Virus record (IMG/VR): IMGVR_UViG_3300037087_000760
Location: 1-64,000 of that record
Length of the DNA: 64,000 nucleotides
Reading direction: 5' to 3' (one strand)
Part shown: one piece after another, positions 5,909 through 64,000 of the stretch
Layout of the letters: every line of letters starts with the position of its first letter
How positions within the stretch are numbered: the first letter of the stretch is position 1
Program-made: the position numbers and the translations under genes
Notes under the pieces: generated by a model
Database searches by the model: none
Seen by the model: the letters and a program-made list of their open reading frames with translations, nothing else
Told to the model about the DNA's origin: nothing

Positions 5909-6319
5909 ATGAAACATATAATTAATTTTTCGAATTTTGTAATGATTAAAGAGAATCAATCATCTTTAAAGCAAAAACAATTAGAAATAATATTAAAAAC
6001 TAATCCAATGATTGATGATTATCATACTGGAATTAGAGATTTGAAAGATATAAAAACTGCAGAAGAAGCATTTTCAGAATCTATTAAAAATAATGAGAGT
6101 TCTTTTGATGATTTTAGTGTTGAAGATATGAAAGAATCATTAAAGACTAAATTGATTACGGTATATTCATCACATCCAATAAAAAATGGAGTATTCGTTA
6201 CTCCAAGTAAAATGGATGCAAAATCATATGCTGGTAATGGTGAGATTTATCAAAAAAGAGTAAACATATTAGATATCGCTTGGATAGATCAATTTGAAGG
6301 ACAATATGCTAAATTTTAA
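5909..6319 (+). CDS. CTS-like protein with possible ADP-ribosyltransferase-like fold
   Basis: MKHIINFSNF..IKE; ITVYS...FVTPSKMDAKSY...EGQY pattern. Confidence 0.45.
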   Translation: MKHIINFSNFVMIKENQSSLKQKQLEIILKTNPMIDDYHTGIRDLKDIKTAEEAFSESIKNNESSFDDFSVEDMKESLKTKLITVYSSHPIKNGVFVTPSKMDAKSYAGNGEIYQKRVNILDIAWIDQFEGQYAKF

Positions 6320-6957
6320 ATATCTTGATCATTCAATTCGTCCAGTAAAACCTTTTCCCCGAATTTATTTTTTAATCTATCTAACCAATCATCAGTCTTA
6401 ATTTTAACCATCCAAATCTGATGTGATTTATCTTGAGCTTTGGCCTTGCATACTACACCTTCCATCAATCCATAATCATTTCTTTTCACACTATTGATGA
6501 ATTCTTGATTAAGATTACCATGATGAATCAATCTGGGAATTTCCATATGTCCAAAATCTTCTATAAATCTTTTTGGATCTACAAATCCTTTGGTAACAGG
6601 ATTCACATCGAACAACACCAGATTCATCTGATCTTTCGGGTCAATATGTCTACCAGCAAACGAATTTGGGCCATACCATTCACAAAAAACAATAAAATTT
6701 TGAATATTCCTATAATCTTTATTCTTTTTGAATACTTCGGATAGTCCATCTCCATATTTATTCAAAAATAAAGGAATAGCCATTCCAAAATCTGGATTCT
6801 TTGCATCTATCATACATTTACGAGTACCAAATTTATACCATCCTCTTTTCTTTGACCATTCAAAACGTAAATTAGAACCATCCAATTTATCGAAGGCATA
6901 AACCACTTCACCCACTAAACGCTTTCCGTAATAATCTATGTGATCGTATTGTTTCAT
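6316..6957 (-). CDS. RNA ligase (Rnl2-like adenylyltransferase domain)
   Basis: Motif I KLDGSN, CEWYG, FDV, EGVVCK, KIK. Confidence 0.75.
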   Translation of the reverse strand: MKQYDHIDYYGKRLVGEVVYAFDKLDGSNLRFEWSKKRGWYKFGTRKCMIDAKNPDFGMAIPLFLNKYGDGLSEVFKKNKDYRNIQNFIVFCEWYGPNSFAGRHIDPKDQMNLVLFDVNPVTKGFVDPKRFIEDFGHMEIPRLIHHGNLNQEFINSVKRNDYGLMEGVVCKAKAQDKSHQIWMVKIKTDDWLDRLKNKFGEKVLLDELNDQDI

Positions 6958-7232
6958 TTTTCTTTTAATTGTTTTGTTAATTCCTTTCTTCTTTCAATTG
7001 CTTTCTCTTTATCTTCCCATTTTTCAATGAAAGTTTTTTTGAAATAGAATTTGTAATAAATAACATAAAATTTCCCTTCTTTTTCAATAACATATCTCCT
7101 TGTGGTAAATAAAGTCAACTCACTCATTAAGTAATTCCATTTTCCCTCGAAAGCAAAATGATATGTCTTTGTCCCGTATGATATATAGACAGAGAATTTA
7201 CTACCGTTTATATAAAATTTTTTAAAGTTCAT
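6954..7232 (-). CDS. Hypothetical protein
   Basis: Overlaps neighbours in operon-like packing. Confidence 0.55.
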
Positions 7233-9252
7233 TTTCTATTTTTTCATAATGAGAAAAAGTCAAATTGTTTATAGCTCTCCCCTGTGATAATGTTCTAAGT
7301 GTTGTTATAAAACCAAACTTCTCAGCCAAAGGTGATTGAACTTTGAGGATTATAGTCGAATCTGGTAATGTATTAATAGATACTATCGTAGAACGATGTT
7401 TATTAAGTTCACTAATTATATCACTCAAATATTCTTCTGGTGTCGTAATTTCTTCATCCATGATAGGTTCAAGTAAACACGGTTTACCTTTCATATAAGC
7501 CTTCGGAAACGAAATCTTCACACAAGTTTCAAAGGCGTATGGGCTTGAATCCACAACATGAGTAGAACCATCTATGATTGTTACTTTCAAACTTTCGATT
7601 TCGTTACCACCCAATGGACCACTAATCATACATTCTTTAAAAGCCTTTTCGATAGAAGTCATATATTCTCTTGGAATGTTTCCACCTTTAACCTCATTCA
7701 CAAAAATTAAACCCTTTGTATCATCGGATACAGGTTCTATTCTATACTCAATCTCAGCAAACATACCCTTTCCACCAGTTTGTCTTGATAATCTTTCTTT
7801 GTGTGTTACTGGTTGAGTTATTGTTTCTCTATAAGAAACTTTTGGTTGTCCTGTATTACATCCGACATTAAAATCAGTAATCAATCTACTTAAAATCACA
7901 TCCAAATATAATTCGCCCATACCACTAATAATGGTTTGTCCATTTTCATCTATCTTAACAGTAAATGTAGGATCTTCCTCAGTAAGTTTTTGAAGAGCAA
8001 ATCCTAATTTATCACTATCCTTATTTGTTAAGGGTTCAATGGTTATTGAAATAACTGGTTTTGGAACAATCATATTCTCAAAATGGAATGTATCTTTTGT
8101 TTCACAAAGAGTATCACCAGTTCGTAAATCTTTTATTCCAACAATACCACAAATATCACCAGCACCAACAGATTTTACTTCTATTTTCTTATTGGCTTGA
8201 ATGGTAAATAATCTTGAAATTCTTTCTGATTGTCCTGTTCTGGAATTATAAACAACTTGACCAAGTTTAAGCACACCAGAATAAACTCGAATCATAGATA
8301 ATTTTCCAGTATTTTTATCTGTCGAAATTTTAAAAACCAAAGCTGATAATTTTTCATCTTCACTTGGTCTAATTTCAACTTGTTCCGAATCTCTATTGGC
8401 ATAAATAATACCCCTATCAACTGGAGATGGTAAAAAATTCACCACAGCATCAAGTAATGTTTGTACTCCCTTATTTTTCTTAGCAGATCCACACAAAATA
8501 GGAACAATAGAAAAATCTAATGTTAAACTACGAAGATTTTTAATTATTTCTTCATTCGTTATCAATTCAGGTGTTTCCAAATACTTCTCAAAAAAGTCAT
8601 CGTTATGTTCCGAAATAGATTCAATCATTTTAATTCGGAATTTCAATGCCTGATCTAAGTATTCTTCAGGTATTACAGAAACACTATATTCCTGACCTAA
8701 TGTTTCGGAAGCCCATGTAATCAGTTTCATATCTATAAGGTCAATAACACCTTTGAAATTACTTTCACTTCCTACGGGAAGTTGAATCACAACTGGTTTC
8801 GATTTAAGTCTATCTTGAATTTGATGTACTACATTAAAGAAATCAGCTCCAATCCTATCCATCTTGTTTACAAAGGCTATTCTTGGTACTTTATATCTGT
8901 TGGCCTGTCTCCAAACTGTTTCGGATTGAGGTTGTACACCGCCGACTGCACAGAAAACAACAACGGCCCCATCTAATATTCGGAGTGAGCGTTCAACCTC
9001 AATCGTAAAATCAATGTGGCCGGGAGTATCTATAATATTTATCTTATGATCTTTCCAATACGATGTAACAGCAGCTGCCATAATCGTTATACCTCGTTCT
9101 TGTTCCTGAGGCATAAAATCGGTTACTGTATTACCATCGTGAACCTCTCCCATTTTATGATTCTCACCAGTATAATACAATATACGCTCAGTCAATGTGG
9201 TTTTTCCGGCATCGATATGGGCTACTATTCCTATATTTCTGTTAAGATTCAT
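7222..9252 (-). CDS. fusA: Elongation factor G
   Basis: [42 protein letters not shown]; 676 aa. Confidence 0.95.
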
Positions 9253-9399
9253 ATTTAATTTTTATTATATTTTCGAAATTTAATGTCGTTTAAAATGATG
9301 TTTATAAACGACATAATGACCGAAATCAGTCTGTAATGTAGGATATAAACAACAAAAAGTATATGTATAACATATCTTAAATTTTATTTATTTTATTTG

Positions 9400-9474
9400 A
9401 GTCAGAGGAGGGATTCGAACCCACGATTGTACGGTTTTGCAGACCGGTGCTTTTGACCACTCAGCCACCCTGAC
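9400..9474 (-). tRNA. tRNA-Cys(GCA)
   Basis: Full cloverleaf, anticodon loop CT-GCA-AA, T loop TTCGAAT, U73. Confidence 0.9.
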
Positions 9475-9593
9475 GAATTATTCTTCTTTGGATTCCTCTA
9501 ATCTTTTCCTGTCGAATTCTAACCATTCATCCAGTTTTTCATCAGTAAAAGAATTGAGTAATTCTACAAAATCCTCATATAAAGTATCCAAAT

Positions 9594-10214
9594 CTATTCC
9601 TTTTTCCATTTTACATTTAATGACTTATCGAATACTAACAAATATCTATGTTTACGACTTCGAGGTCTCCATTCACCCTCGACATCTTTCACTTTCCCCC
9701 TTGATTGCTTTATATATGTTCCATCTGGTTTTTTAATCCAGAAATCATTTTTGGGTTCTGTTAAACCATAATATTGAAAATTACATGCTTTATATATCGT
9801 ACCTAAATGAAAATCAGCATCAGCATAACTCAATATAACTCTAACTTTCGTATCTTTTCTCAATTGACGAATCGCCCTCGATACAAACCAACTGGTAATA
9901 TTATGTTCTACTTTTTGAATATCTGGATGAACACATAATCTACTCAACTCAAATAAACCCTCTTGATCATTTCTTTCCAATCCTAACATCCCCTTAGAAA
10001 GTTCTGGAACTGGAAAACCAGTGAAAATAATCACACCAACTAATTGTTCATTTTCAAACAGACCGTAATTAAAACCACTTTTAAATCCTCTGGAGATGTC
10101 TTTGAGATAATGAAATTTCAATAATAATTCACCAGCTTGTTCTTTGGTAATTCTACTCACATTGAAATTTTCTTTCATACCCTCATTTATAAACTCCAAA
10201 AATGTTTTTATCAT
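9594..10214 (-). CDS. mom: Mu Mom-like DNA adenine modification protein with CTS-like N-terminus
   Basis: FHYL, GLFENEQLVGVIIF, ELSRL, SWFVSRAIRQL, ILSYAD, HLGTIYKACNF; start MIKTFLEFINE just after late motif at 10220-10229. Confidence 0.8.
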   Translation of the reverse strand: MIKTFLEFINEGMKENFNVSRITKEQAGELLLKFHYLKDISRGFKSGFNYGLFENEQLVGVIIFTGFPVPELSKGMLGLERNDQEGLFELSRLCVHPDIQKVEHNITSWFVSRAIRQLRKDTKVRVILSYADADFHLGTIYKACNFQYYGLTEPKNDFWIKKPDGTYIKQSRGKVKDVEGEWRPRSRKHRYLLVFDKSLNVKWKKE

Positions 10215-10249
10215 GATTGTATATATTAATATACTCAATCATGAATTAG

Positions 10250-10342
10250 AAGCGGGGGTAGGAGTCGAACCCACTATCTAAAGGTTATGAGCCTTTAATG
10301 ATTTATGTTGACGAATCAACAATTCCGTTTCACTCTCCCGCA
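10250..10342 (-). tRNA. tRNA-Met(CAT), initiator-like, with hairpin inserted in D loop
   Basis: AAAGG-CTCATAA-CCTTT arm, T arm intact, 1:72 mismatch; D loop contains TGTTGA-TTCG-TCAACA. Confidence 0.7.
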
Positions 10343-10356
10343 ATGTATTAAAATAG

Positions 10357-10445
10357 TAGCGGATGTAAGATTCGAACTTACGACTTCCTTATGGGAAGTT
10401 TCAGCTTATGAGACTGAGGAGATAGGCCAACTTCTCTAATCCGCG
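10357..10445 (-). tRNA. tRNA-Met(CAT) with long variable arm
   Basis: C1:U72 mismatch, TCAGT-CTCATAA-GCTGA, variable hairpin ACTTCC-CATAA-GGAAGT. Confidence 0.75.
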
Positions 10446-10451
10446 ATGTGT

Positions 10452-10552
10452 GTCCTACTGTTGGTGCGACCAACCTTTCTGGAACTCATTATACCGTAGG
10501 TTAGAGCGACCAACTTTATTAGTTCAATGATATTTCCCTCTGAATTAGTAGG
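10452..10552 (-). ncRNA. Unknown tRNA-sized structured RNA
   Basis: Closed by GTCCTACT/AGTAGGAC; two similar GTTGG-TCGCn-CYAAC hairpins; sits between two tRNAs. Confidence 0.5.
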
Positions 10553-10558
10553 ACTTAG

Positions 10559-10630
<72 letters not shown>

Positions 10631-10635
10631 ATATA

Positions 10636-10884
10636 TTATTTCAATTCATGTCTGCACAATGGACATTCTTTAATTTTTATCAACCAATGAATAGTTCTCA
10701 CTACCGTTTTTTCTGGGTCATCAAAACACACCTTTTCACCATCCCAAATTCCTACGATTGATGTTTTCACAGTTTTACCATTAACTCTTTTTATGTTATG
10801 GTATTGAACTAAATCACCTTTCTTAATATCATCTAATTGTTTACCAATCAGATTTCCGTAATTGTCGTATTTACTTTCTTCCAT
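10636..10884 (-). CDS. Hypothetical protein inside tRNA cluster
   Basis: 82 aa ORF with own TAnnTTTG promoter. Confidence 0.65.
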   Translation of the reverse strand: MEESKYDNYGNLIGKQLDDIKKGDLVQYHNIKRVNGKTVKTSIVGIWDGEKVCFDDPEKTVVRTIHWLIKIKECPLCRHELK

Positions 10885-10888
10885 TTTA

Positions 10889-10920
10889 CAAAGATATAAA
10901 TAAATATTCTAATTAAAAAA
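10889..10920 (-). promoter_or_regulatory. Bacteroidota-type promoter (TATCTTTG with upstream T-run)
   Basis: Matches -7 consensus TAnnTTTG. Confidence 0.7.
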
Positions 10921-10926
10921 TCATTG

Positions 10927-10999
10927 AGATCGGAGAGGGAATCAAACCCCCGTCTCTGAGGTTGCAGCTCAGCACCTATTTACACTCGGCCATCCGACC
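10927..10999 (-). tRNA. tRNA-Cys(GCA)
   Basis: CTGAG-CTGCAAC-CTCAG arm, U73. Confidence 0.8.
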
Positions 11000-11004
11000 A
11001 TTTG

Positions 11005-11077
11005 AGCGATAAGTGGGGGTCAAACCCACGACCTTCAGCTTGGGAAGCTGACACTCTATCAACTGAGCTATTATCGC
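11005..11077 (-). tRNA. tRNA-Gly(CCC)
   Basis: TCAGC-TTCCCAA-GCTGA, U73. Confidence 0.9.
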
Positions 11078-11130
11078 ATCCGTTTGACACATCCTTTGAC
11101 ATCACCCTCTCTCCGTTATATCAAACAGCG

Positions 11131-11202
11131 AGCGAGTAATCAGAATCGAACTGACATCATCGGTATGGTAAGCCGATACACTACACATTGTGCTATACTC
11201 GC
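11131..11202 (-). tRNA. tRNA-Gly(ACC), 31:39 mismatch
   Basis: TCGGC-TTACCAT-ACCGA, Gly-type acceptor, U73. Confidence 0.75.
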
Positions 11203-11277
11203 GAATCAGTACCCGCACTTTCCGCCTTAATTATTCCCTGTTACACTGCGGTTAGGGAGTTGGTTATGATAGACCTG

Positions 11278-11360
11278 AGCGGGAGAAGGGATTCGAACCC
11301 TCACCTGAAGTTTGGAAGACTCCTATGCTAGCTTACGCGACCGTTAAACACCACTCCCGC
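11278..11360 (-). tRNA. tRNA-Gly(TCC) with D-loop insertion
   Basis: GGAGT-CTTCCAA-ACTTC; 19-nt D loop containing GC-GTAA-GC. Confidence 0.8.
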
Positions 11361-11371
11361 GAGTGATTTTG

Positions 11372-11442
11372 AGCAGATAATGAGAATCGAACTCACATCA
11401 AAAGATTGGAAATCTCTTACACTACCATTGTGCTATATCTGC
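11372..11442 (-). tRNA. tRNA-Gly(TCC)
   Basis: AGAGA-TTTCCAA-TCTTT, U73. Confidence 0.9.
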
Positions 11443-11448
11443 GTAAAA

Positions 11449-11553
11449 GGTCAGTATGTCGAATGTATTCGGACTGATTTTCGTTTTGCACATTCCTAAT
11501 CATCTGTCTTAACATCTCAGTTCACCGCCATTGTGCTACCGCGTTTACTGACC
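11449..11553 (-). ncRNA. Unknown tRNA-sized structured RNA
   Basis: Closed by GGTCAGTA/TACTGACC; carries D-arm-like TAGCACAATGG; fills the gap between two tRNAs. Confidence 0.45.
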
Positions 11554-11554
11554 T

Positions 11555-11629
11555 TGGAGCGGGATGCGGGATTTAAACCCGCGACCTGAAGTTTGGTAAA
11601 CTTCCGCTCTATCACTGAGCTAATCCCGC
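11555..11629 (-). tRNA. tRNA-Gly(ACC) with encoded CCA
   Basis: Perfect GAAGT-TTACCAA-ACTTC arm, U73-CCA. Confidence 0.9.
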
Positions 11630-11717
11630 GTGGGAGGCTATCTAAACTCTTTGACCCAATCAGATTTCTCCTGTCATGAGTTAACTTCGCCTTATTAGTT
11701 TTTCGAATGTTTTTTAG

Positions 11718-11789
11718 TAGCCCCGGCGGGAATCGAACCTGCATCCAGAAATTAGAAGTTTCTTGTTCTATCCATTGAACTACGGAGCC
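11718..11789 (-). tRNA. tRNA-Arg(TCT)
   Basis: AGAAA-CTTCTAA-TTTCT, canonical cloverleaf. Confidence 0.9.
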
Positions 11790-11838
11790 ATACTTTATAT
11801 AAACTATTTACCACCATTAAGTTTAATATTAATTATTG

Positions 11839-11916
11839 TAACCCTGAAGGGATTCGAACCCTCATTTTCATCCGTTATGCACAATCGAGTTTAGAAAACT
11901 CAGCCATTACAGGGCT
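11839..11916 (-). tRNA. D-armless tRNA-Arg(TCT)-like RNA with 22-nt variable region
   Basis: Acceptor AGCCCTG/CAGGGTT, TGAGT-TTTCTAA-ACTCG arm and T arm intact; only TAATGGC between acceptor and anticodon arm. Confidence 0.6.
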
Positions 11917-11921
11917 ATTTG

Positions 11922-12003
11922 TACCGATGGAGAGATTCGAACTCTCACTTCCGATGGAAACAAGTTCCTAAAACTTGCGTGTCTACCATTCCACCACACC
12001 GGC
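11922..12003 (-). tRNA. tRNA-Leu(TAG)
   Basis: CAAGT-TTTAGGA-ACTTG, class II variable arm, A73. Confidence 0.9.
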
Positions 12004-12029
12004 TTAAAAAGTTAAATAAGTTGTGATAT

Positions 12030-12124
12030 TGTACACCATACCCAACCCAGAGTCGAACTGGATTAGTTGGGGTCTCGAACCCCGCTTCACACAACCACCT
12101 ACTACCGTTCAGTATTATTCAACC
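12030..12124 (-). ncRNA. tRNA-derived element with two T-arm-like hairpins
   Basis: GGGG-TTCGAGA-CCCC and CCAG-TTCGACT-CTGG plus D-like TACT-GAACGGT-AGTA. Confidence 0.5.
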
Positions 12125-12128
12125 TTAG

Positions 12129-12198
12129 CAGTACAAGCAGGAATCGAACCTACATCCACCCTCTACTGAGGGTACTCTTTCCATTAAGCTACTGTACT
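12129..12198 (-). ncRNA. tRNA-like RNA lacking an anticodon loop (AGTA tetraloop)
   Basis: Acceptor, D and T arms canonical; CCCTC-AGTA-GAGGG in place of anticodon arm; G73. Confidence 0.75.
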
Positions 12199-12262
12199 TA
12201 CACATCAATTTTATTCTAGCTTATTATGATGTGATTTACACTTTTGATGTAAATATCTTTTA

Positions 12263-12330
12263 GTACTCTAAAAGGATTCGAACCTATACTCCTCGCTTAC
12301 GCGAGTGTGCTACCATTACACCATAAAGTC
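12263..12330 (-). ncRNA. tRNA-like RNA lacking an anticodon loop (GTAA GNRA tetraloop)
   Basis: GTGT-AATGGTA-GCAC D arm, CTCGC-GTAA-GCGAG, TTCGAAT T loop. Confidence 0.7.
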
Positions 12331-12430
12331 AACTTTCGTCATTGACACTGACATATCATTTCGGAAAGAACACATATTTTACTCCTTTCTGATTGTCAGA
12401 TCTTACTCGTTTCAAATTCCAGTGTTTTTG

Positions 12431-12503
12431 CAGGCAGTACGGGAGTTGAACCCGCTCCGAACGCCGTGACAGGGCGACATCTTAACCGTTTGACCTACTG
12501 CCT
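12431..12503 (-). tRNA. tRNA-Asp(GTC)
   Basis: CT-GTC-AC loop, G73. Confidence 0.85.
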
Positions 12504-12521
12504 ATGTAGGGGAACATTCTG

Positions 12522-12598
12522 CGGGCCCAGTGGGATTCAAACCCACCTGTTATTCCTGATCGACAGTCAGGTAGACACATCCAGCATCTCCTGAGCCC
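12522..12598 (-). tRNA. tRNA-Asp(GTC), divergent
   Basis: CCTGA-CTGTCGA-TCAGG, 8-nt variable loop, T loop TTTGAAT, G73. Confidence 0.75.
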
Positions 12599-12609
12599 AT
12601 TCATTATTG

Positions 12610-12709
12610 CGGTAGGAGTTGGGATCGAACCAACATATAAAGCATTCATCCTATCAGACTACTTCTGATGTCCATCGGTGGCACCCTATGAACTTTATGC
12701 TATCCTACC
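12610..12709 (-). ncRNA. tRNA-like RNA with intact acceptor/T arm and expanded centre lacking a canonical anticodon arm
   Basis: GGTAGGA/TCCTACC-G, GTTGG-TTCGATC-CCAAC, internal ATCAGA-AGTAG-TCTGAT hairpin. Confidence 0.65.
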
Positions 12710-12729
12710 ATTTATTTTTAGTATCCAAT

Positions 12730-12762
12730 ATGTCAAAGAACATATTATAATGTCAAAGAAAC
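12730..12762 (-). promoter_or_regulatory. Tandem boxA-like antitermination elements
   Basis: Two copies of TTCTTTGACAT on the tRNA-coding strand, 20 nt apart. Confidence 0.5.
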
Positions 12763-12770
12763 ATTATAAT

Positions 12771-12848
12771 TGGCGGTACATTACGGTTTCGAACCGTTGA
12801 TTTTACATGGGTGACAACCATGTTCCTCACCAAGAGGCCTAATGAACC
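12771..12848 (-). tRNA. tRNA-Asp(GTC) with encoded CCA
   Basis: CATGG-TTGTCAC-CCATG, G73-CCA. Confidence 0.8.
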
Positions 12849-12854
12849 ATTTTG

Positions 12855-12985
12855 AGTCGGGAGCAGGAATCGAACCTACAGCTCTGGTTTAGGAGACCGA
12901 AGTAACTGTAACCATCGCCACTCTTTCACAAGAGGGAATATTTAGAACAGTGTTTTTAAGCGTGTTGCCATTACACTATCCCGAC
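12855..12985 (-). ncRNA. 131-nt tRNA body carrying an inserted anticodon-display module (Arg CCT loop)
   Basis: GTCGGGA/TCCCGAC acceptor, D and T arms canonical; insert has CTCTT-GTGA-AAGAG, GTTACTTC then GGT-CTCCTAA-ACC. Confidence 0.7.
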
Positions 12986-12990
12986 ATAAA

Positions 12991-13080
12991 AAGATTTTAG
13001 AGATATTCACCACTGAGTATTGTTTGAAAACAAATTTGCAGTTTGTCGAAGTAACCCAGATAAGTTCACTACTAAATCTT
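12991..13080 (-). ncRNA. Stand-alone anticodon-display module (Cys GCA loop)
   Basis: Closing stem, GTTACTTC, ACAAA-CTGCAAA-TTTGT, AATATC. Confidence 0.65.
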
Positions 13081-13093
13081 CTTTTAAAAATAT

Positions 13094-13167
13094 ACAGAGA
13101 ATGTTTTCAAAAAGTATATTTGGTAAACATTATGAGTGTTTGATGTAACTCTTCGAACCGCTTCTGT
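13094..13167 (-). ncRNA. Stand-alone anticodon-display module (Met CAT loop)
   Basis: ACAGA/TCTGT stem, GTTACATC, AAACA-CTCATAA-TGTTT, AACATTC. Confidence 0.65.
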
Positions 13168-23162: not shown

Positions 23163-23492
23163 TTATTTTAAAGTAATTAAATAACAATTCGAGGCAAAAA
23201 CATTATCACAATATTCAGCCTTACATTTATATTCACCACTTGGTAAGAGCATTAATATGTCCTGTTGGTCAATCGGAAGATCCAATTGACCCATATTACC
23301 ATCAATAAAAACAGGAATATCATACCCAGCCAATTCCTCAGCATCTCCGTGAATATATGCCTTATTTGTTACAACACTATCCATTACAAAATCACCGTAA
23401 CTTTTAGGTTTAACCAAAGCTGGTTCTTGGTCTTTATCAAATATACCCAATAATGACATGGGTTTTGTGGTTGTAAATCTTAACTGTTTCAT
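23163..23492 (-). CDS. Hypothetical protein
   Basis: 109 aa. Confidence 0.6.
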   Translation of the reverse strand: MKQLRFTTTKPMSLLGIFDKDQEPALVKPKSYGDFVMDSVVTNKAYIHGDAEELAGYDIPVFIDGNMGQLDLPIDQQDILMLLPSGEYKCKAEYCDNVFASNCYLITLK

Positions 23493-23887
23493 ACAATCTT
23501 ATTTTTTAATAAATCCTTGTTTGCTTTTTTAATAGTTGGTCTTATTTTGGAATTGGTCTTTGCTTTTCCAACAGTATATAAATCAGTCGAAACTAATTTG
23601 TTATCATCATTGGATAAAACAATGAATTCATCCCCAGCATACCTTATAAATATATCCTTTTCGAACAATAAAGTTTTAATTTTTCTGACAATCAACCTTA
23701 TATGTTCGTCCCCATTAAAATGCCCACCTTCATTAACTTTCTTTAATCCATTAATGTCAATGAAGTACATAAAGGTATAATCTGTTAATTTGACTTCCCT
23801 GAATAAGAAATGACGATTATAGAGCTTGGTCATATCATCATGAAAAGCCATGTACTCTAATTCTCTTATTCTTTTTTCAGTAATCAT
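23489..23887 (-). CDS. Stand-alone, C-terminally short GGDEF-like domain (AGDEF)
   Basis: HDDMTKLYNR, IDINGLKKVN, GHFNGDE, RYAGDEF. Confidence 0.8.
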   Translation of the reverse strand: MITEKRIRELEYMAFHDDMTKLYNRHFLFREVKLTDYTFMYFIDINGLKKVNEGGHFNGDEHIRLIVRKIKTLLFEKDIFIRYAGDEFIVLSNDDNKLVSTDLYTVGKAKTNSKIRPTIKKANKDLLKNKIV

Positions 23888-62649: not shown

Positions 62650-63453
62650 TTACTTATAATTAGGGATAATCTTGGTTAAATATTCCCATTCCTGAGAAAA
62701 TATTGGTGGATCAACAACAACCCATTTACCATCCACTTTTACGATAGCACGGCCACGCTTTAAACCAGTTGGTATTTTATCCCAATTCTGACCTTTCTGA
62801 AAAATCATTTCTTGTTGTTGTTTGGAATTTTTTCCATTTAATTGAGATCGTGAAGAATGTGGATATAAGGATTGTGCCACCGATGAAATACTATTTCTGG
62901 TGGCATCTCCCTGACGCCAAACCAGATAGTTGATAACATCAGTCGGGGATGGAATGGTGAATACTCTGGAATCAAAACGAGCACCTTTATTTTTTTTAAT
63001 GAGTTTTATGACATCAGATAGTTTAACTAATCCCAATAATTCATCAAATTCCAATGAATTCATTGATGCCGCTAATAACCAAATATAAAATTCTTTATTG
63101 AATGTTTCAGTTACAATGGAAGCGGAATTACTACAAATCTTCTGAACAATTCCATCCCACCAAGGCATTGTTTTAATATCATCAAAATCGGTCATGATGA
63201 TAGAAATTTCATCCGATTGAACAAATCCAATTTTACAACCCTGAGCTTCTTCACAAAGAGCAATAGCGGATTGATTCATCATATTCACAAAATTTTCATC
63301 AAATGGTCTTTTGAACCTCTTAGTGAATGTGTGGAAAGCACGACCATCTACACGGATAAGAGTATATGTTCTCTGAGGGAGTTTACCACGAGTGACTTCC
63401 TCATAATTTTTCATTCTTTCCCCTAAAGAATCTTTCTCTGGTTTCTTACTCAT
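62650..63453 (-). CDS. thg1: tRNA(His) guanylyltransferase Thg1-like protein
   Basis: IRVDGRAFHTFT, QSDEIS, FDSR, WRQGDATRNSI; TATTTTTG promoter at 63479-63486. Confidence 0.92.
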   Translation of the reverse strand: MSKKPEKDSLGERMKNYEEVTRGKLPQRTYTLIRVDGRAFHTFTKRFKRPFDENFVNMMNQSAIALCEEAQGCKIGFVQSDEISIIMTDFDDIKTMPWWDGIVQKICSNSASIVTETFNKEFYIWLLAASMNSLEFDELLGLVKLSDVIKLIKKNKGARFDSRVFTIPSPTDVINYLVWRQGDATRNSISSVAQSLYPHSSRSQLNGKNSKQQQEMIFQKGQNWDKIPTGLKRGRAIVKVDGKWVVVDPPIFSQEWEYLTKIIPNYK

Positions 63454-63512: not shown

Positions 63513-64000
63513 TTAAGCCAATAATTCTATTTTTCCTTTCAAAATATCTTTCCAACGACACGACTTTCCAGTAATGTGATCAGTTACAACATCTTCTCTT
63601 ATTCTATAAGTCCTTCTTTTTTGACCTCCCCTACTTCCATTTCCAATTTGGTCATTACGAAAATTCTTATTCTTCTCGTAGTTTTTCTTATCTTCGATTA
63701 CTTTTAGTTTCTCATATAATCTCTGATAAGCTATTTCTTCATTTTTTGTTTGGTCTCTTGTGTCTTGACATTTAATTTGAATTCCAGTTGGAATATGAGT
63801 TAATTGAACACAAGAGGCCACTTTATTCACATTCTGACCACCAGCTCCAGAACTACGGATATATTTCTTAGTTATCTCATTATAATTCAACTGAAGGTCT
63901 GTATTAACTTCTGGGTTCATAATTGCCACCGTTACGAAGCTGGTTTGAACCCTACCATTCTTTTCGGTAGGTGGTATCCTCACAAAACAGTGTGATCCAC
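63513..64000 (-). CDS. prfA: Class I peptide release factor, RF1-like (5' end outside window)
   Basis: PPT, SSGAGGQNVNK, QIGNG, RTY, VTDH; frame stays open to the window edge (GSHCFVRIPPTE). Confidence 0.85.
   Translation of the reverse strand, partial: GSHCFVRIPPTEKNGRVQTSFVTVAIMNPEVNTDLQLNYNEITKKYIRSSGAGGQNVNKVASCVQLTHIPTGIQIKCQDTRDQTKNEEIAYQRLYEKLKVIEDKKNYEKNKNFRNDQIGNGSRGGQKRRTYRIREDVVTDHITGKSCRWKDILKGKIELLA

What the first reader, a model, noticed from the sequence alone, without database searches (positions are those of the whole stretch)
12129..12330. Two tRNA bodies whose anticodon loop is replaced by a tetraloop
Seen: both have canonical acceptor, D and T arms, but CCCTC-AGTA-GAGGG and CTCGC-GTAA-GCGAG with perfect 5-bp stems. 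The sequences are unrelated to each other, so the loss appears to have happened twice and been kept. Inferred: these cannot decode. They may be decoys for body- or elbow-recognising proteins, uncharged-tRNA mimics, or non-ribosomal aminoacyl donors. They are the structural complement of the anticodon-only modules 700 nt away.
Basis: partly seen in the sequence, partly recalled or inferred. Interest (0 to 1): 0.8.

Follow-up and report, generated by a model that had tools for sequence, protein, structure and literature searches.

The report
Anticodon-less tRNA look-alikes in a huge phage
Two genes in a huge phage's tRNA cluster fold like tRNAs but have only four bases where the codon-reading loop should be. 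One of them belongs to a family kept in five related phages while that loop shrinks, so it is probably a working RNA that has stopped decoding.

Summary
On the minus strand, A (12198..12129) and B (12330..12263) both pass Rfam's tRNA threshold. Each has a 5-bp anticodon stem closed by 4 nt (AGUA, GUAA). Independent peat-metagenome assemblies carry identical sequence, so this is not an assembly error.

A is not a dead gene. Together with two upstream hairpins it forms a roughly 125-nt unit found in five related huge phages, including the 735-kb LR756501. All 34 scored base pairs hold in all five copies, and 10 show compensatory changes. The anticodon loop alone drifts: 4, 5, 6, 7 and 7 nt, never with U33. 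Two copies still carry GUC, and the unit usually sits among tRNA-Asp genes, so A is probably a tRNA-Asp paralogue that stopped decoding. An EF-G tree suggests the loop shortened at least twice.

B is a singleton with two mismatches and a GNRA cap. It may be functional or decaying.

Function is inferred only. I favour a tRNA-Asp mimic that works through its body, most likely as a decoy in a tRNA-targeting arms race. The main rival is a processing or stability handle.

The parts
12129..12198 (-). tRNA-like A: a full cloverleaf whose 5-bp anticodon stem (CCCUC/GAGGG) is capped by AGUA. The discriminator is G and no CCA is encoded. It is probably a tRNA-Asp paralogue.
   Evidence: Rfam tRNA 43.8 bits. 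21 of 21 pairs form. Orthologues occur in four other phages. The sequence is identical in independent assemblies.
12201..12233 (-). Leader hairpin hp2 of the A unit: a 7-bp stem and a 19-nt A/U-rich loop whose flanks are conserved. It ends 2 nt before A.
   Evidence: Folds. Conserved in all 5 family members, with 2 compensatory pairs. A sigma-70-like -35/-10 match overlaps it, so a promoter reading is not excluded.
12235..12253 (-). Leader hairpin hp1 of the A unit: a 7-bp stem with an invariant CAAAA loop.
   Evidence: Three pairs show compensatory change across the 5 members.
12263..12330 (-). tRNA-like B: a cloverleaf whose 5-bp anticodon stem (CUCGC/GCGAG) is capped by the GNRA tetraloop GUAA. 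It has G1.A72 and U50.U64 mismatches, discriminator C, and no encoded CCA.
   Evidence: Rfam tRNA 39.7 bits. Pair list. No orthologue in the relatives' loci or in the phage collection.
12430..12848 (-). Three canonical tRNA-Asp(GUC) genes (12430-12503, 12521-12598, 12771-12848) just upstream. This is the cluster A's family belongs to in related phages.
   Evidence: ARAGORN and Rfam. In LR756501, L304, L305 and L311 the A unit adjoins a tRNA-Asp gene: called directly upstream in L304, L305 and LR756501, and directly downstream in LR756501 and L311.

Best explanation
A, and perhaps B, is a gene for a tRNA-shaped small RNA that no longer decodes and works through its body.

Shown:
- A, with its two-hairpin leader, is a conserved structured RNA present in five related huge phages.
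- Its acceptor, D, anticodon and T stems and both leader hairpins are maintained by compensatory substitution.
- Its anticodon loop lacks U33 everywhere and varies from 4 to 7 nt.
- It sits in the tRNA-Asp cluster in most members, and two members still carry GUC.

Inferred:
- It is transcribed with the array and folds into the L shape. All the tertiary-contact bases are present.
- It is trimmed and CCA-tailed like its neighbours, none of which encodes CCA.
- It is then bound by something that normally binds tRNA-Asp or its GUN-anticodon relatives.

The mechanism I favour, at roughly 30%, is a non-cleavable or harmless substrate mimic. It would occupy a tRNA-targeting host nuclease, or another protein that handles tRNA-Asp, during infection.

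B would be a younger, lineage-specific example of the same kind, or a decaying copy. I put that at about even odds.
For: Conservation of A:
- Covariance model R1 finds the unit only in the window, LR756501, L304, L305 and L311, at 92-167 bits.
- On that alignment 170 of 170 cells pair, 10 of 34 pairs carry compensatory changes, 0 of 500 shuffles reach this, and shifted registers pair at only 32-47%.
- Between the window and LR756501, the A unit is the only part of the 3.8-kb array that still aligns apart from three tRNA-Asp bodies.
- Many pairs are G.U, so the structure works only on this RNA strand.

Loss of decoding and origin:
- The loops are AGUA, AGUGA, ACGUCU, AAGUCGA and AGAACGG, none with U33.
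- ARAGORN calls the L304 copy tRNA-Asp(GUC).
- The EF-G tree places LR756501 with L305 and L311 (support 97/94) and apart from the window, implying independent loop shortening.
- The anticodon stem, which RNase P does not need (recalled from the literature), is still kept. It has two compensatory changes specific to the window lineage.

Context:
- The order tRNA array, EF-G, RNA ligase (PF09414) is conserved in the relatives.
- The arrays next to EF-G are rich in multiple divergent Asp, Asn and Tyr tRNAs.
- The window also encodes a Thg1-like tRNA 5'-end enzyme.
- tRNA-targeting immunity, and phage tRNAs that escape it through changes in the anticodon arm, are documented (PMC10264068, PMC12445682, PMC11555353).
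Against: - There is no expression, processing, CCA or binding data. The one metatranscriptome laid on the region shows nothing specific.
- No tRNA decoy of this kind has been described in the papers I could search.
- A decoy must compete with a very large pool of cellular tRNA.
- The equally conserved leader hairpins are not explained by a decoy role. They fit a processing or composite-RNA role better.
- The family has only five members, and the alignment used for pair counts was fitted to the model.
- B lacks any comparative support.
Confidence: 0.55

Rival explanations
1. Processing or stability handle, in the manner of MALAT1/mascRNA. The tRNA-shaped part exists to recruit RNase P and the 3'-end enzymes. 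Cleavage at its 5' end would release the conserved upstream two-hairpin RNA with a defined 3' end, or the fold would stabilise a composite RNA. The released tRNA-like piece would be a by-product.
For: - The 54-nt leader is as conserved as the tRNA-like part and covaries, whereas the flanks of canonical tRNAs in these arrays are not conserved.
- In crAss-like phage cr10_1 and two IMG/VR contigs, a tRNA-like element with a 4-bp/4-nt anticodon hairpin lies 29 nt downstream of a permuted tmRNA.
- Other viral families of short-armed tRNA-likes have conserved hairpins just upstream.
- T4's species 1 RNA, in the T4 tRNA cluster, is also an acceptor plus T-arm frame carrying other structure.
Against: - Any neighbouring real tRNA could serve as a cleavage signal.
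- RNase P does not need the anticodon stem, yet that stem is maintained.
- hp2 ends only 2 nt from the cleavage site, which should hinder RNase P rather than help it.
- The leader could instead hold a promoter.
Confidence: 0.25
2. Decaying tRNA pseudogenes. Small deletions in the anticodon loops of duplicated tRNA genes in a fast-evolving array produced both elements, and they have not yet been lost.
For: - A single 3-nt deletion in a normal tRNA gene would give exactly 'perfect stem plus 4-nt loop'.
- Loop length in A's family varies as if unconstrained.
- B has two mismatched pairs and no orthologue.
- The array holds several other degenerate tRNA-like pieces.
- Phage genome papers routinely list such calls as pseudo-tRNAs.
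Against: - For A, five orthologues have no broken pair in 170 cells and 10 covarying pairs. The sequence around it has diverged beyond alignment.
- U33 is absent from all five copies, which suggests decoding was lost before they diverged, yet the body was kept.
- For B the only counter-evidence is weak: the cap is a GNRA loop, about a 3% chance for a random 4-mer.
- GNRA- and UUCG-capped tRNA-likes recur elsewhere.
Confidence: 0.1
3. Non-ribosomal aminoacyl carrier. The RNA is still charged (A by AspRS, through G73, G2-C71, G10 and the remaining GU) and hands its amino acid to a transferase rather than to the ribosome.
For: - The top four acceptor pairs are identical in the window and LR756501, and the discriminator is G in four of five copies.
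- The T stem is invariant in all five.
- That pattern fits sequence-specific recognition of the acceptor/T-arm half.
Against: - From what I recall of the literature, bacterial AspRS depends strongly on G34-U35-C36 and C38, and the window's copy lacks C36 and C38.
- No tRNA-dependent transferase turned up among the window proteins I scanned.
- L305 has discriminator A and no GU in its loop.
Confidence: 0.06
4. Unusual but working decoders. On this reading the elements have a 4-bp anticodon stem with a 6-nt loop (A), or otherwise read codons in a non-standard way.
For: ARAGORN's own reading of A is a 6-nt loop with a 2-nt anticodon. tRNAs with 4-bp anticodon stems are reported as frequent in bacteria (PMC13092985).
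Against: - A 14-nt arm cannot give a 7-nt loop with a symmetric stem.
- Opening the loop would break C-G closing pairs.
- There is no U33 in any family member.
- Loop length and sequence differ in every orthologue.
Confidence: 0.03

Closest known systems
Phage T4 species 1 RNA (rnaC), a small stable RNA in the T4 tRNA cluster
   Same: It is encoded inside a phage tRNA gene cluster on the tRNA strand. It ends in a T arm plus acceptor-like stem while the rest departs from a tRNA. As far as I recall, its function is still unknown.
   Different: rnaC is 139 nt, with large structured inserts where the D and anticodon arms would be. A and B keep the whole cloverleaf and lose only the loop. There is no sequence relationship. 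The window's elements at 12611-12709 and 12855-12985 resemble rnaC more closely than A and B do.
mascRNA (the tRNA-like small RNA cut from MALAT1) and the tRNA-like parts of murine gammaherpesvirus 68 TMERs
   Same: These are tRNA-shaped, non-decoding RNAs. From what I recall of the literature, they are recognised by RNase P or RNase Z and the CCA-adding enzyme, are not aminoacylated, and serve as processing modules for an adjoining RNA.
   Different: They are eukaryotic or animal-virus systems. There is no Rfam match to RF01684. For A and B, processing has not been shown.
Canonical phage tRNA-Asp(GUC)
   Same: A's family lies among tRNA-Asp genes. It shares A1-U72, G2-C71, U3-A70 and G73, and a near-identical anticodon stem, with LR756501's tRNA-Asp. 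Two orthologues keep GUC.
   Different: A's family has no U33, a loop of 4-7 nt, and a conserved two-hairpin leader that real tRNAs in these arrays lack. It has diverged more than them: about 75% identity against 93% for the best-matching tRNA-Asp pair.
tmRNA tRNA-like domain
   Same: It is a tRNA mimic without an anticodon that is processed and handled as a tRNA. In crAss-like phages a short-armed tRNA-like sits beside a permuted tmRNA.
   Different: tmRNA lacks a real D stem and anticodon arm, carries G3.U70 and has a tag reading frame. A and B have neither G3.U70 nor a tag frame, and no tmRNA model matches them.
Rfam RF02435 SpF41 sRNA (Streptococcus)
   Same: Its Rfam consensus is a tRNA-like fold with a 5-bp/4-nt hairpin in the anticodon position and a GGUUCGAAUCC T arm. 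It is found in strain-specific regions of streptococcal genomes (PMC6064168).
   Different: A scores only 16.4 bits against a gathering score of 52, so it is an analogue and not a member. The function of SpF41 is also unknown.
Phage tRNAs with altered anticodon arms that escape tRNA-targeting defences
   Same: Both involve phage tRNA-array genes changed in the anticodon arm, with RNA repair genes nearby (PMC10264068, PMC12445682, PMC11555353).
   Different: Those tRNAs still decode and rescue translation. A and B cannot decode.

Membership tests
tRNA (Rfam RF00005), functional decoder | Cloverleaf with a 7-bp acceptor stem, D arm and T arm, scoring above the family's gathering score | tested here: met
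   A scores 43.8 bits and B 39.7 bits against 29. Pairs are listed.
tRNA (Rfam RF00005), functional decoder | 7-nt anticodon loop with U33 and a three-base anticodon | tested here: not met
   The loops are 4 nt, AGUA and GUAA. No member of A's family has U33.
tRNA pseudogene (neutral decay) | Loss of constraint: stems break at the neutral rate in orthologues | tested here: not met
   For A, 170 of 170 cells pair in 5 orthologues, 10 pairs covary and 0 of 500 shuffles reach this. For B the test is inconclusive because no orthologue exists.
tmRNA, standard or permuted | tRNA-like domain with G3.U70, a tag reading frame, and a match to a tmRNA model | tested here: not met
   Position 3-70 is U-A in A and C-G in B. 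ARAGORN finds no tmRNA in the window. There is no tmRNA Rfam match beyond a trivial 15-nt hit.
mascRNA / menRNA (RF01684) | Match to the family model; cut out by RNase P and RNase Z and CCA-tailed | tested here: not met
   No Rfam match at E up to 10 over 12100-12360. Processing cannot be tested with these tools. The resemblance is in how it might work, not in family membership.
SpF41 sRNA (RF02435) | Score at or above the gathering score of 52 bits | tested here: not met
   16.4 bits, E 3.9.
A-unit family (defined here: hp1 + hp2 + tRNA-Asp-like body) | Full-length match to model R1 with both leader hairpins and all four tRNA stems paired | tested here: met
   Window 167.1 bits, LR756501 164.3, L304 133.9, L305 133.7, L311 91.6. 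The next best hit is 45 bits. The first two trained the model, so only the other three are independent.
Decoy or inhibitor of a tRNA-targeting nuclease | Binds the nuclease and protects host or phage tRNA | not testable with these tools
   Only context is available: a conserved EF-G/RNA-ligase/tRNA-array module, a Thg1-like gene, and multiple Asp/Asn/Tyr tRNA variants.

The most novel reading that the evidence does not exclude
Huge phages keep a dedicated tRNA-Asp mimic without an anticodon (the A unit). It would act as an RNA decoy or inhibitor against host nucleases that attack GUN-anticodon tRNAs. tRNA look-alikes whose anticodon stem is capped by a short stable loop would then be a widespread, overlooked class of phage and bacterial small RNAs, not annotation noise.
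Probability: 0.2. Interest if true: 0.85.

Novelty: new variant of a known kind. Interest (0 to 1): 0.62.

Why it matters
Phage tRNA genes are now seen as weapons in a contest over host tRNA-cleaving defences. Annotation pipelines, however, discard tRNA-like calls without an anticodon as "pseudo" or "undetermined".

This case shows that at least one such element is a conserved structured RNA with its own leader, kept in five huge phages while its decoding loop erodes. That turns a class of ignored calls into candidates for a function that does not involve decoding, such as decoy, processing module or carrier.

It also gives a concrete test object. The unit is about 125 nt, has known orthologues, and yields clear predictions for end-mapping, CCA addition, charging and protein binding.

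The pattern scans suggest that similar capped-stem tRNA look-alikes are common in viral contigs. At least a few also occur in bacterial and archaeal genomes.

Tried and rejected
1. Assembly error. Rejected, because two independent runs give identical contigs.
2. Expression. The only same-study metatranscriptome laid on the region showed generic tRNA matches and nothing specific. This is uninformative.
3. More A relatives by exact DNA patterns in IMG/VR. Three patterns found only the window's own contig. The metagenome scan with EF-G gave 72 loci but no A unit by BLAST or by model R1. What worked was EF-G homologues followed by contig look-up.
4. B orthologues. None in the phage collection or in 11 relatives' loci. 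L130 shares B's stem (CUCGC/GCGAG), but the rest differs and the contig is unrelated, so I treat it as coincidence. An apparent 82% match to an L005 tRNA-Val came from free end gaps in the alignment.
5. B as a tRNA-His-like element (C73, with a possible G-1). The register does not work; I checked this by hand on the sequence.
6. A as tRNA-His (GUG in LR756501's loop, and a Thg1-like gene in the window). Rejected: the discriminator is G in four of five copies, GUG is not conserved, and other orthologues carry GUC.
7. Known RNA families. Only tRNA matches, with weak hits to SpF41 and an antisense plastid element.
8. Other short-armed families. Several viral and cellular families were inspected. 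Many hits turned out to be tmRNA ends, coding sequence or 15-nt arms that could still hold a 7-nt loop, so I use only the clear capped cases as context. An Acidobacteriota family and a Bacteroidales family next to integrase or recombinase genes do not fold as clean cloverleaves and were set aside.
9. Literature. Seven searches found no description of anticodon-less tRNA genes in phages. PMC10690425 notes tRNA-like candidate RNAs that ARAGORN calls only sometimes.

Full report
**What the window is.** The window is the first 64 kb of IMG/VR contig IMGVR_UViG_3300037087_000760 (211 kb). It is a low-GC phage genome (about 30% GC). The same sequence occurs in many peat-metagenome runs. Its nearest relative in the GenBank phage collection is the 735-kb uncultured phage LR756501. 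The phage's EF-G is 72-83% identical to EF-G of a clade of uncultured relatives, and next closest (54-57%) to proteins that, where named, are Bacteroidota EF-G.

A tRNA array runs on the minus strand from about 9399 to 12990. It holds 13 canonical tRNAs and several odd tRNA-like pieces. Genes around it include:
- EF-G (7222-9252)
- an RNA ligase (6316-6957)
- a Mom-like gene inside the array (9594-10238)
- a Thg1-like tRNA 5'-end enzyme (62650-63453)
- part of release factor 1 (63513-63983)

**The observation.** On the minus strand, A (12198..12129) and B (12330..12263) score 43.8 and 39.7 bits on Rfam's tRNA model, against a gathering score of 29. In both, the model's 7-nt anticodon loop is filled by 4 nt. 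The anticodon arms read CCCUC-AGUA-GAGGG and CUCGC-GUAA-GCGAG.

A pairs at all 21 cloverleaf positions. B has G1.A72 and U50.U64 mismatches. Both keep the bases that make the tRNA elbow and core, as read directly from the sequence. Neither encodes CCA, and nor do the canonical tRNAs beside them whose 3' flanks I read. A 14-nt arm cannot form a 7-nt loop with a symmetric stem, so neither can present an anticodon.

Contigs from two other peat runs in different studies reproduce 10583-13100 and 11901-12528 without a single difference. The short loops are therefore real sequence. These are assembled contigs, not raw reads.

**A is part of a conserved unit.** Between the window and LR756501, EF-G is about 75% identical at the DNA level. 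Apart from three tRNA-Asp bodies, the only part of the 3.8-kb array that still aligns is a 129-nt block covering A and the 54 nt upstream of it.

That upstream stretch folds into two hairpins:
- hp1 (12253..12235) has an invariant CAAAA loop.
- hp2 (12233..12201) has a 19-nt A/U-rich loop.

The LR756501 copy has anticodon stem CCGCC/GGCGG and a 5-nt loop, AGUGA. Compared with A, 7 of its 21 tRNA pairs are changed: 4 on both sides and 3 on one side. None is broken.

**Finding more members.** A covariance model of the unit (R1) found nothing more in 0.9 Mb of loci fetched through EF-G from JGI metagenomes. Contigs fetched through closer EF-G homologues gave three further members: L304 (133.9 bits), L305 (133.7 bits) and L311 (91.6 bits). 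The best unrelated hit scored 45 bits.

Over the five sequences, all 170 pair cells form standard pairs. Ten of 34 pairs carry compensatory changes, and 0 of 500 column shuffles reach either figure. Shifted registers pair at only 32-47%. One caveat applies: the alignment was fitted to the model, and two of the five sequences trained it. Many pairs are G.U, so the structure exists only in RNA of this strand.

**The loop is what varies.** The five anticodon loops are as follows:

| Member | Loop | Length |
|---|---|---|
| window | AGUA | 4 nt |
| LR756501 | AGUGA | 5 nt |
| L311 | ACGUCU | 6 nt |
| L304 | AAGUCGA | 7 nt |
| L305 | AGAACGG | 7 nt |

None has U33, which is close to universal in working tRNAs. 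Two keep GUC, and ARAGORN calls the L304 copy tRNA-Asp(GUC). In four of the five genomes the unit adjoins a tRNA-Asp gene. That gene lies directly upstream in L304, L305 and LR756501, and directly downstream in LR756501 and L311. In the window, B sits directly upstream and the tRNA-Asp cluster lies further up.

LR756501's neighbouring tRNA-Asp shares the first three acceptor pairs, G73 and a near-identical anticodon stem with the unit. A is therefore most simply a tRNA-Asp paralogue. It probably lost a proper anticodon loop before these phages diverged and has kept everything else.

An EF-G tree puts LR756501 with L305 and L311 (support 97/94), apart from the window. If EF-G tracks the phages, the loop shortened independently in at least two lineages.

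The tetraloop is thus an end state of erosion and not a conserved design. Body and leader are under selection. The window lineage also made two compensatory changes in the anticodon stem itself, so that stem is still needed.

**B.** B has no detectable relative in the phage collection or in the eleven relatives' loci. It occupies the place just upstream of the A unit where three relatives have a called tRNA-Asp, but it does not resemble that tRNA. It carries two mismatches.

Its cap is a GNRA tetraloop on a GC-rich stem, about a 3% chance for a random 4-mer. That fits a recurring pattern (next paragraph) but is weak evidence on its own. I rate functional and decaying as about equally likely.

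A 19-codon reading frame (12375..12316) begins upstream of B with AAGGAG six bases before its AUG and overlaps B's first 15 nt. This is read directly from the sequence and I did not follow it up.

**The wider picture.** I scanned for a tRNA D loop and T loop set 2-5 nt too close together to hold a 17-nt anticodon arm.

Many hits are tmRNA ends, coding sequence, or 15-nt arms that could still hold a 7-nt loop. Clean cloverleaves with capped stems do recur:
- GAAA caps in L094 and L133
- UUCG caps in L104, L283 and L148 (a 488-kb contig)
- a GCAA cap in L248, which also has G3.U70, an encoded CCA and a tRNA-Gly directly downstream
- a crAss-like family with CUGG-UUAU-CCAG

The crAss-like family includes cr10_1. 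There the element lies 29 nt after a permuted tmRNA that passes Rfam's threshold. The tested examples also pass Rfam's tRNA threshold.

Two homologous copies in one viral family have completely different stems, CUCGG and UUUGA, with 5- and 4-nt loops. Rfam's SpF41 sRNA consensus is itself a tRNA-like fold with a 5-bp/4-nt hairpin.

The T4 tRNA cluster carries species 1 RNA, an acceptor plus T-arm frame with foreign inserts. The window has two similar elements at 12611-12709 and 12855-12985.

Seven literature searches found no account of anticodon-less tRNA genes in phages. One survey lists tRNA-like candidate RNAs that ARAGORN calls only sometimes (PMC10690425). Phage genome papers list "pseudo-tRNAs".

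**How it most likely works.** What is shown is a conserved, strand-specific, tRNA-shaped RNA with a conserved leader and a loop that cannot decode. Everything beyond that is inference.

The body keeps what RNase P, the 3'-end enzymes, the CCA-adding enzyme and elbow-binding partners recognise. I therefore expect it to be matured with the array.

Two readings compete:

1. *A tRNA-Asp mimic that occupies a protein which handles tRNA-Asp or its GUN relatives. I favour this slightly.* The family derives from tRNA-Asp. GU survives in four of five loops despite the length changes. The anticodon stem is kept although processing does not need it. The T stem is invariant.

   The context also fits. The array next to EF-G is rich in several divergent Asp, Asn and Tyr tRNAs in all relatives. 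EF-G followed by an RNA ligase is conserved, and a Thg1-like enzyme is present. That is the profile of a phage under attack on its tRNAs (PMC10264068, PMC12445682, PMC11555353).
2. *A processing or stability handle for the leader RNA, as in mascRNA.* This explains the conserved leader and the crAss tmRNA arrangement. It does not explain why the anticodon stem is kept, or why a real tRNA would not serve.

Plain pseudogene decay is hard to hold for A but open for B. Charging as a non-ribosomal donor, and unusual decoding, are minor possibilities.

**Verdict.** The finding is real. It is a new variant of a known kind, the non-decoding tRNA mimic, with an untested function.

Noticed in passing
window 11130-11202 and 11555-11629 (-), with 11004-11077 and 11371-11442: The array carries four tRNA-Gly genes. 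Two have the anticodon ACC (A34), which is unusual for bacteria or phages.
   Followed up: no
window 11279-11360 (-): A tRNA-Gly(UCC)-like cloverleaf has about 10 extra nt between the D arm and the anticodon stem. Its Rfam tRNA match is only partial, at 27.4 bits.
   Followed up: partly
window 11448-11554 (-): A structured RNA of about 107 nt is closed by a 9-bp stem (z -2.15). I found no link to A or B.
   Followed up: partly
window 11839-11917 (-): A tRNA-like element has an acceptor stem and T arm but no D arm, plus a hairpin GAGUU-UUCUA-AACUC.
   Followed up: no
window 12042-12083 (-), within 12004-12128: Two T-arm-like hairpins (GGGGUUCGAGACCCC and CCAGUUCGACUCUGG) sit back to back inside a longer stem, directly downstream of A. 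A similar pair of T-arm hairpins lies at the permuted tmRNA of cr10_1.
   Followed up: partly
window 12611-12709 and 12855-12985 (-): Two elements have a perfect acceptor stem and T arm, but 60-80 nt of other structure stands where the anticodon arm (and in one, the D arm) should be. They resemble T4 species 1 RNA. The second has the same T arm as A.
   Followed up: partly
window 12316-12375 (-): A 19-codon reading frame has a strong ribosome-binding site (AAGGAG, 6-nt spacer) and ends inside B's D loop.
   Followed up: no
window 6316-6957, 7222-9252, 62650-63453, 63513-63983 (all -): The phage encodes an RNA ligase (PF09414), EF-G, a Thg1-like tRNA 5'-end enzyme and part of release factor 1. 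The order tRNA array, EF-G, RNA ligase is conserved in the relatives.
   Followed up: partly
window 9594-10238 (-) and 23489-23887 (-): A Mom-family gene sits inside the tRNA array, and a small GGDEF-domain protein lies further along.
   Followed up: no
L305 6927-7390, L306 7922-8381, L306 8825-9048: The homologous tRNA arrays of two related phages contain GOLLD RNA, each copy with an embedded tRNA-Lys. One array also holds a group I intron. The window's array has neither.
   Followed up: no
L306 7406-7472 and L001 about 8680-8745 (-): A D-arm-less tRNA-Tyr(GUA)-like element with a 4-bp anticodon stem and CUGUAAA loop is shared by two relatives. It is another conserved odd tRNA-like.
   Followed up: no
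L003 1204-1561 (crAss-like phage cr10_1, MT774382): A permuted tmRNA (Rfam 49.6 bits, tag GNNFVTDYTQLAVA) is followed 29 nt later by a tRNA-like with a 4-bp/4-nt anticodon hairpin. The arrangement recurs in L097 and L120 with a covarying pair.
   Followed up: partly
L248 4997-5066 (Hyphomicrobiaceae MAG): A clean cloverleaf has a GCAA-capped anticodon stem, G3.U70 and an encoded CCA. It lies directly upstream of a tRNA-Gly(GCC) gene.
   Followed up: no
window 10356-10445 (-): A 90-nt tRNA with a CAU anticodon is unusually long for tRNA-Met.
   Followed up: no
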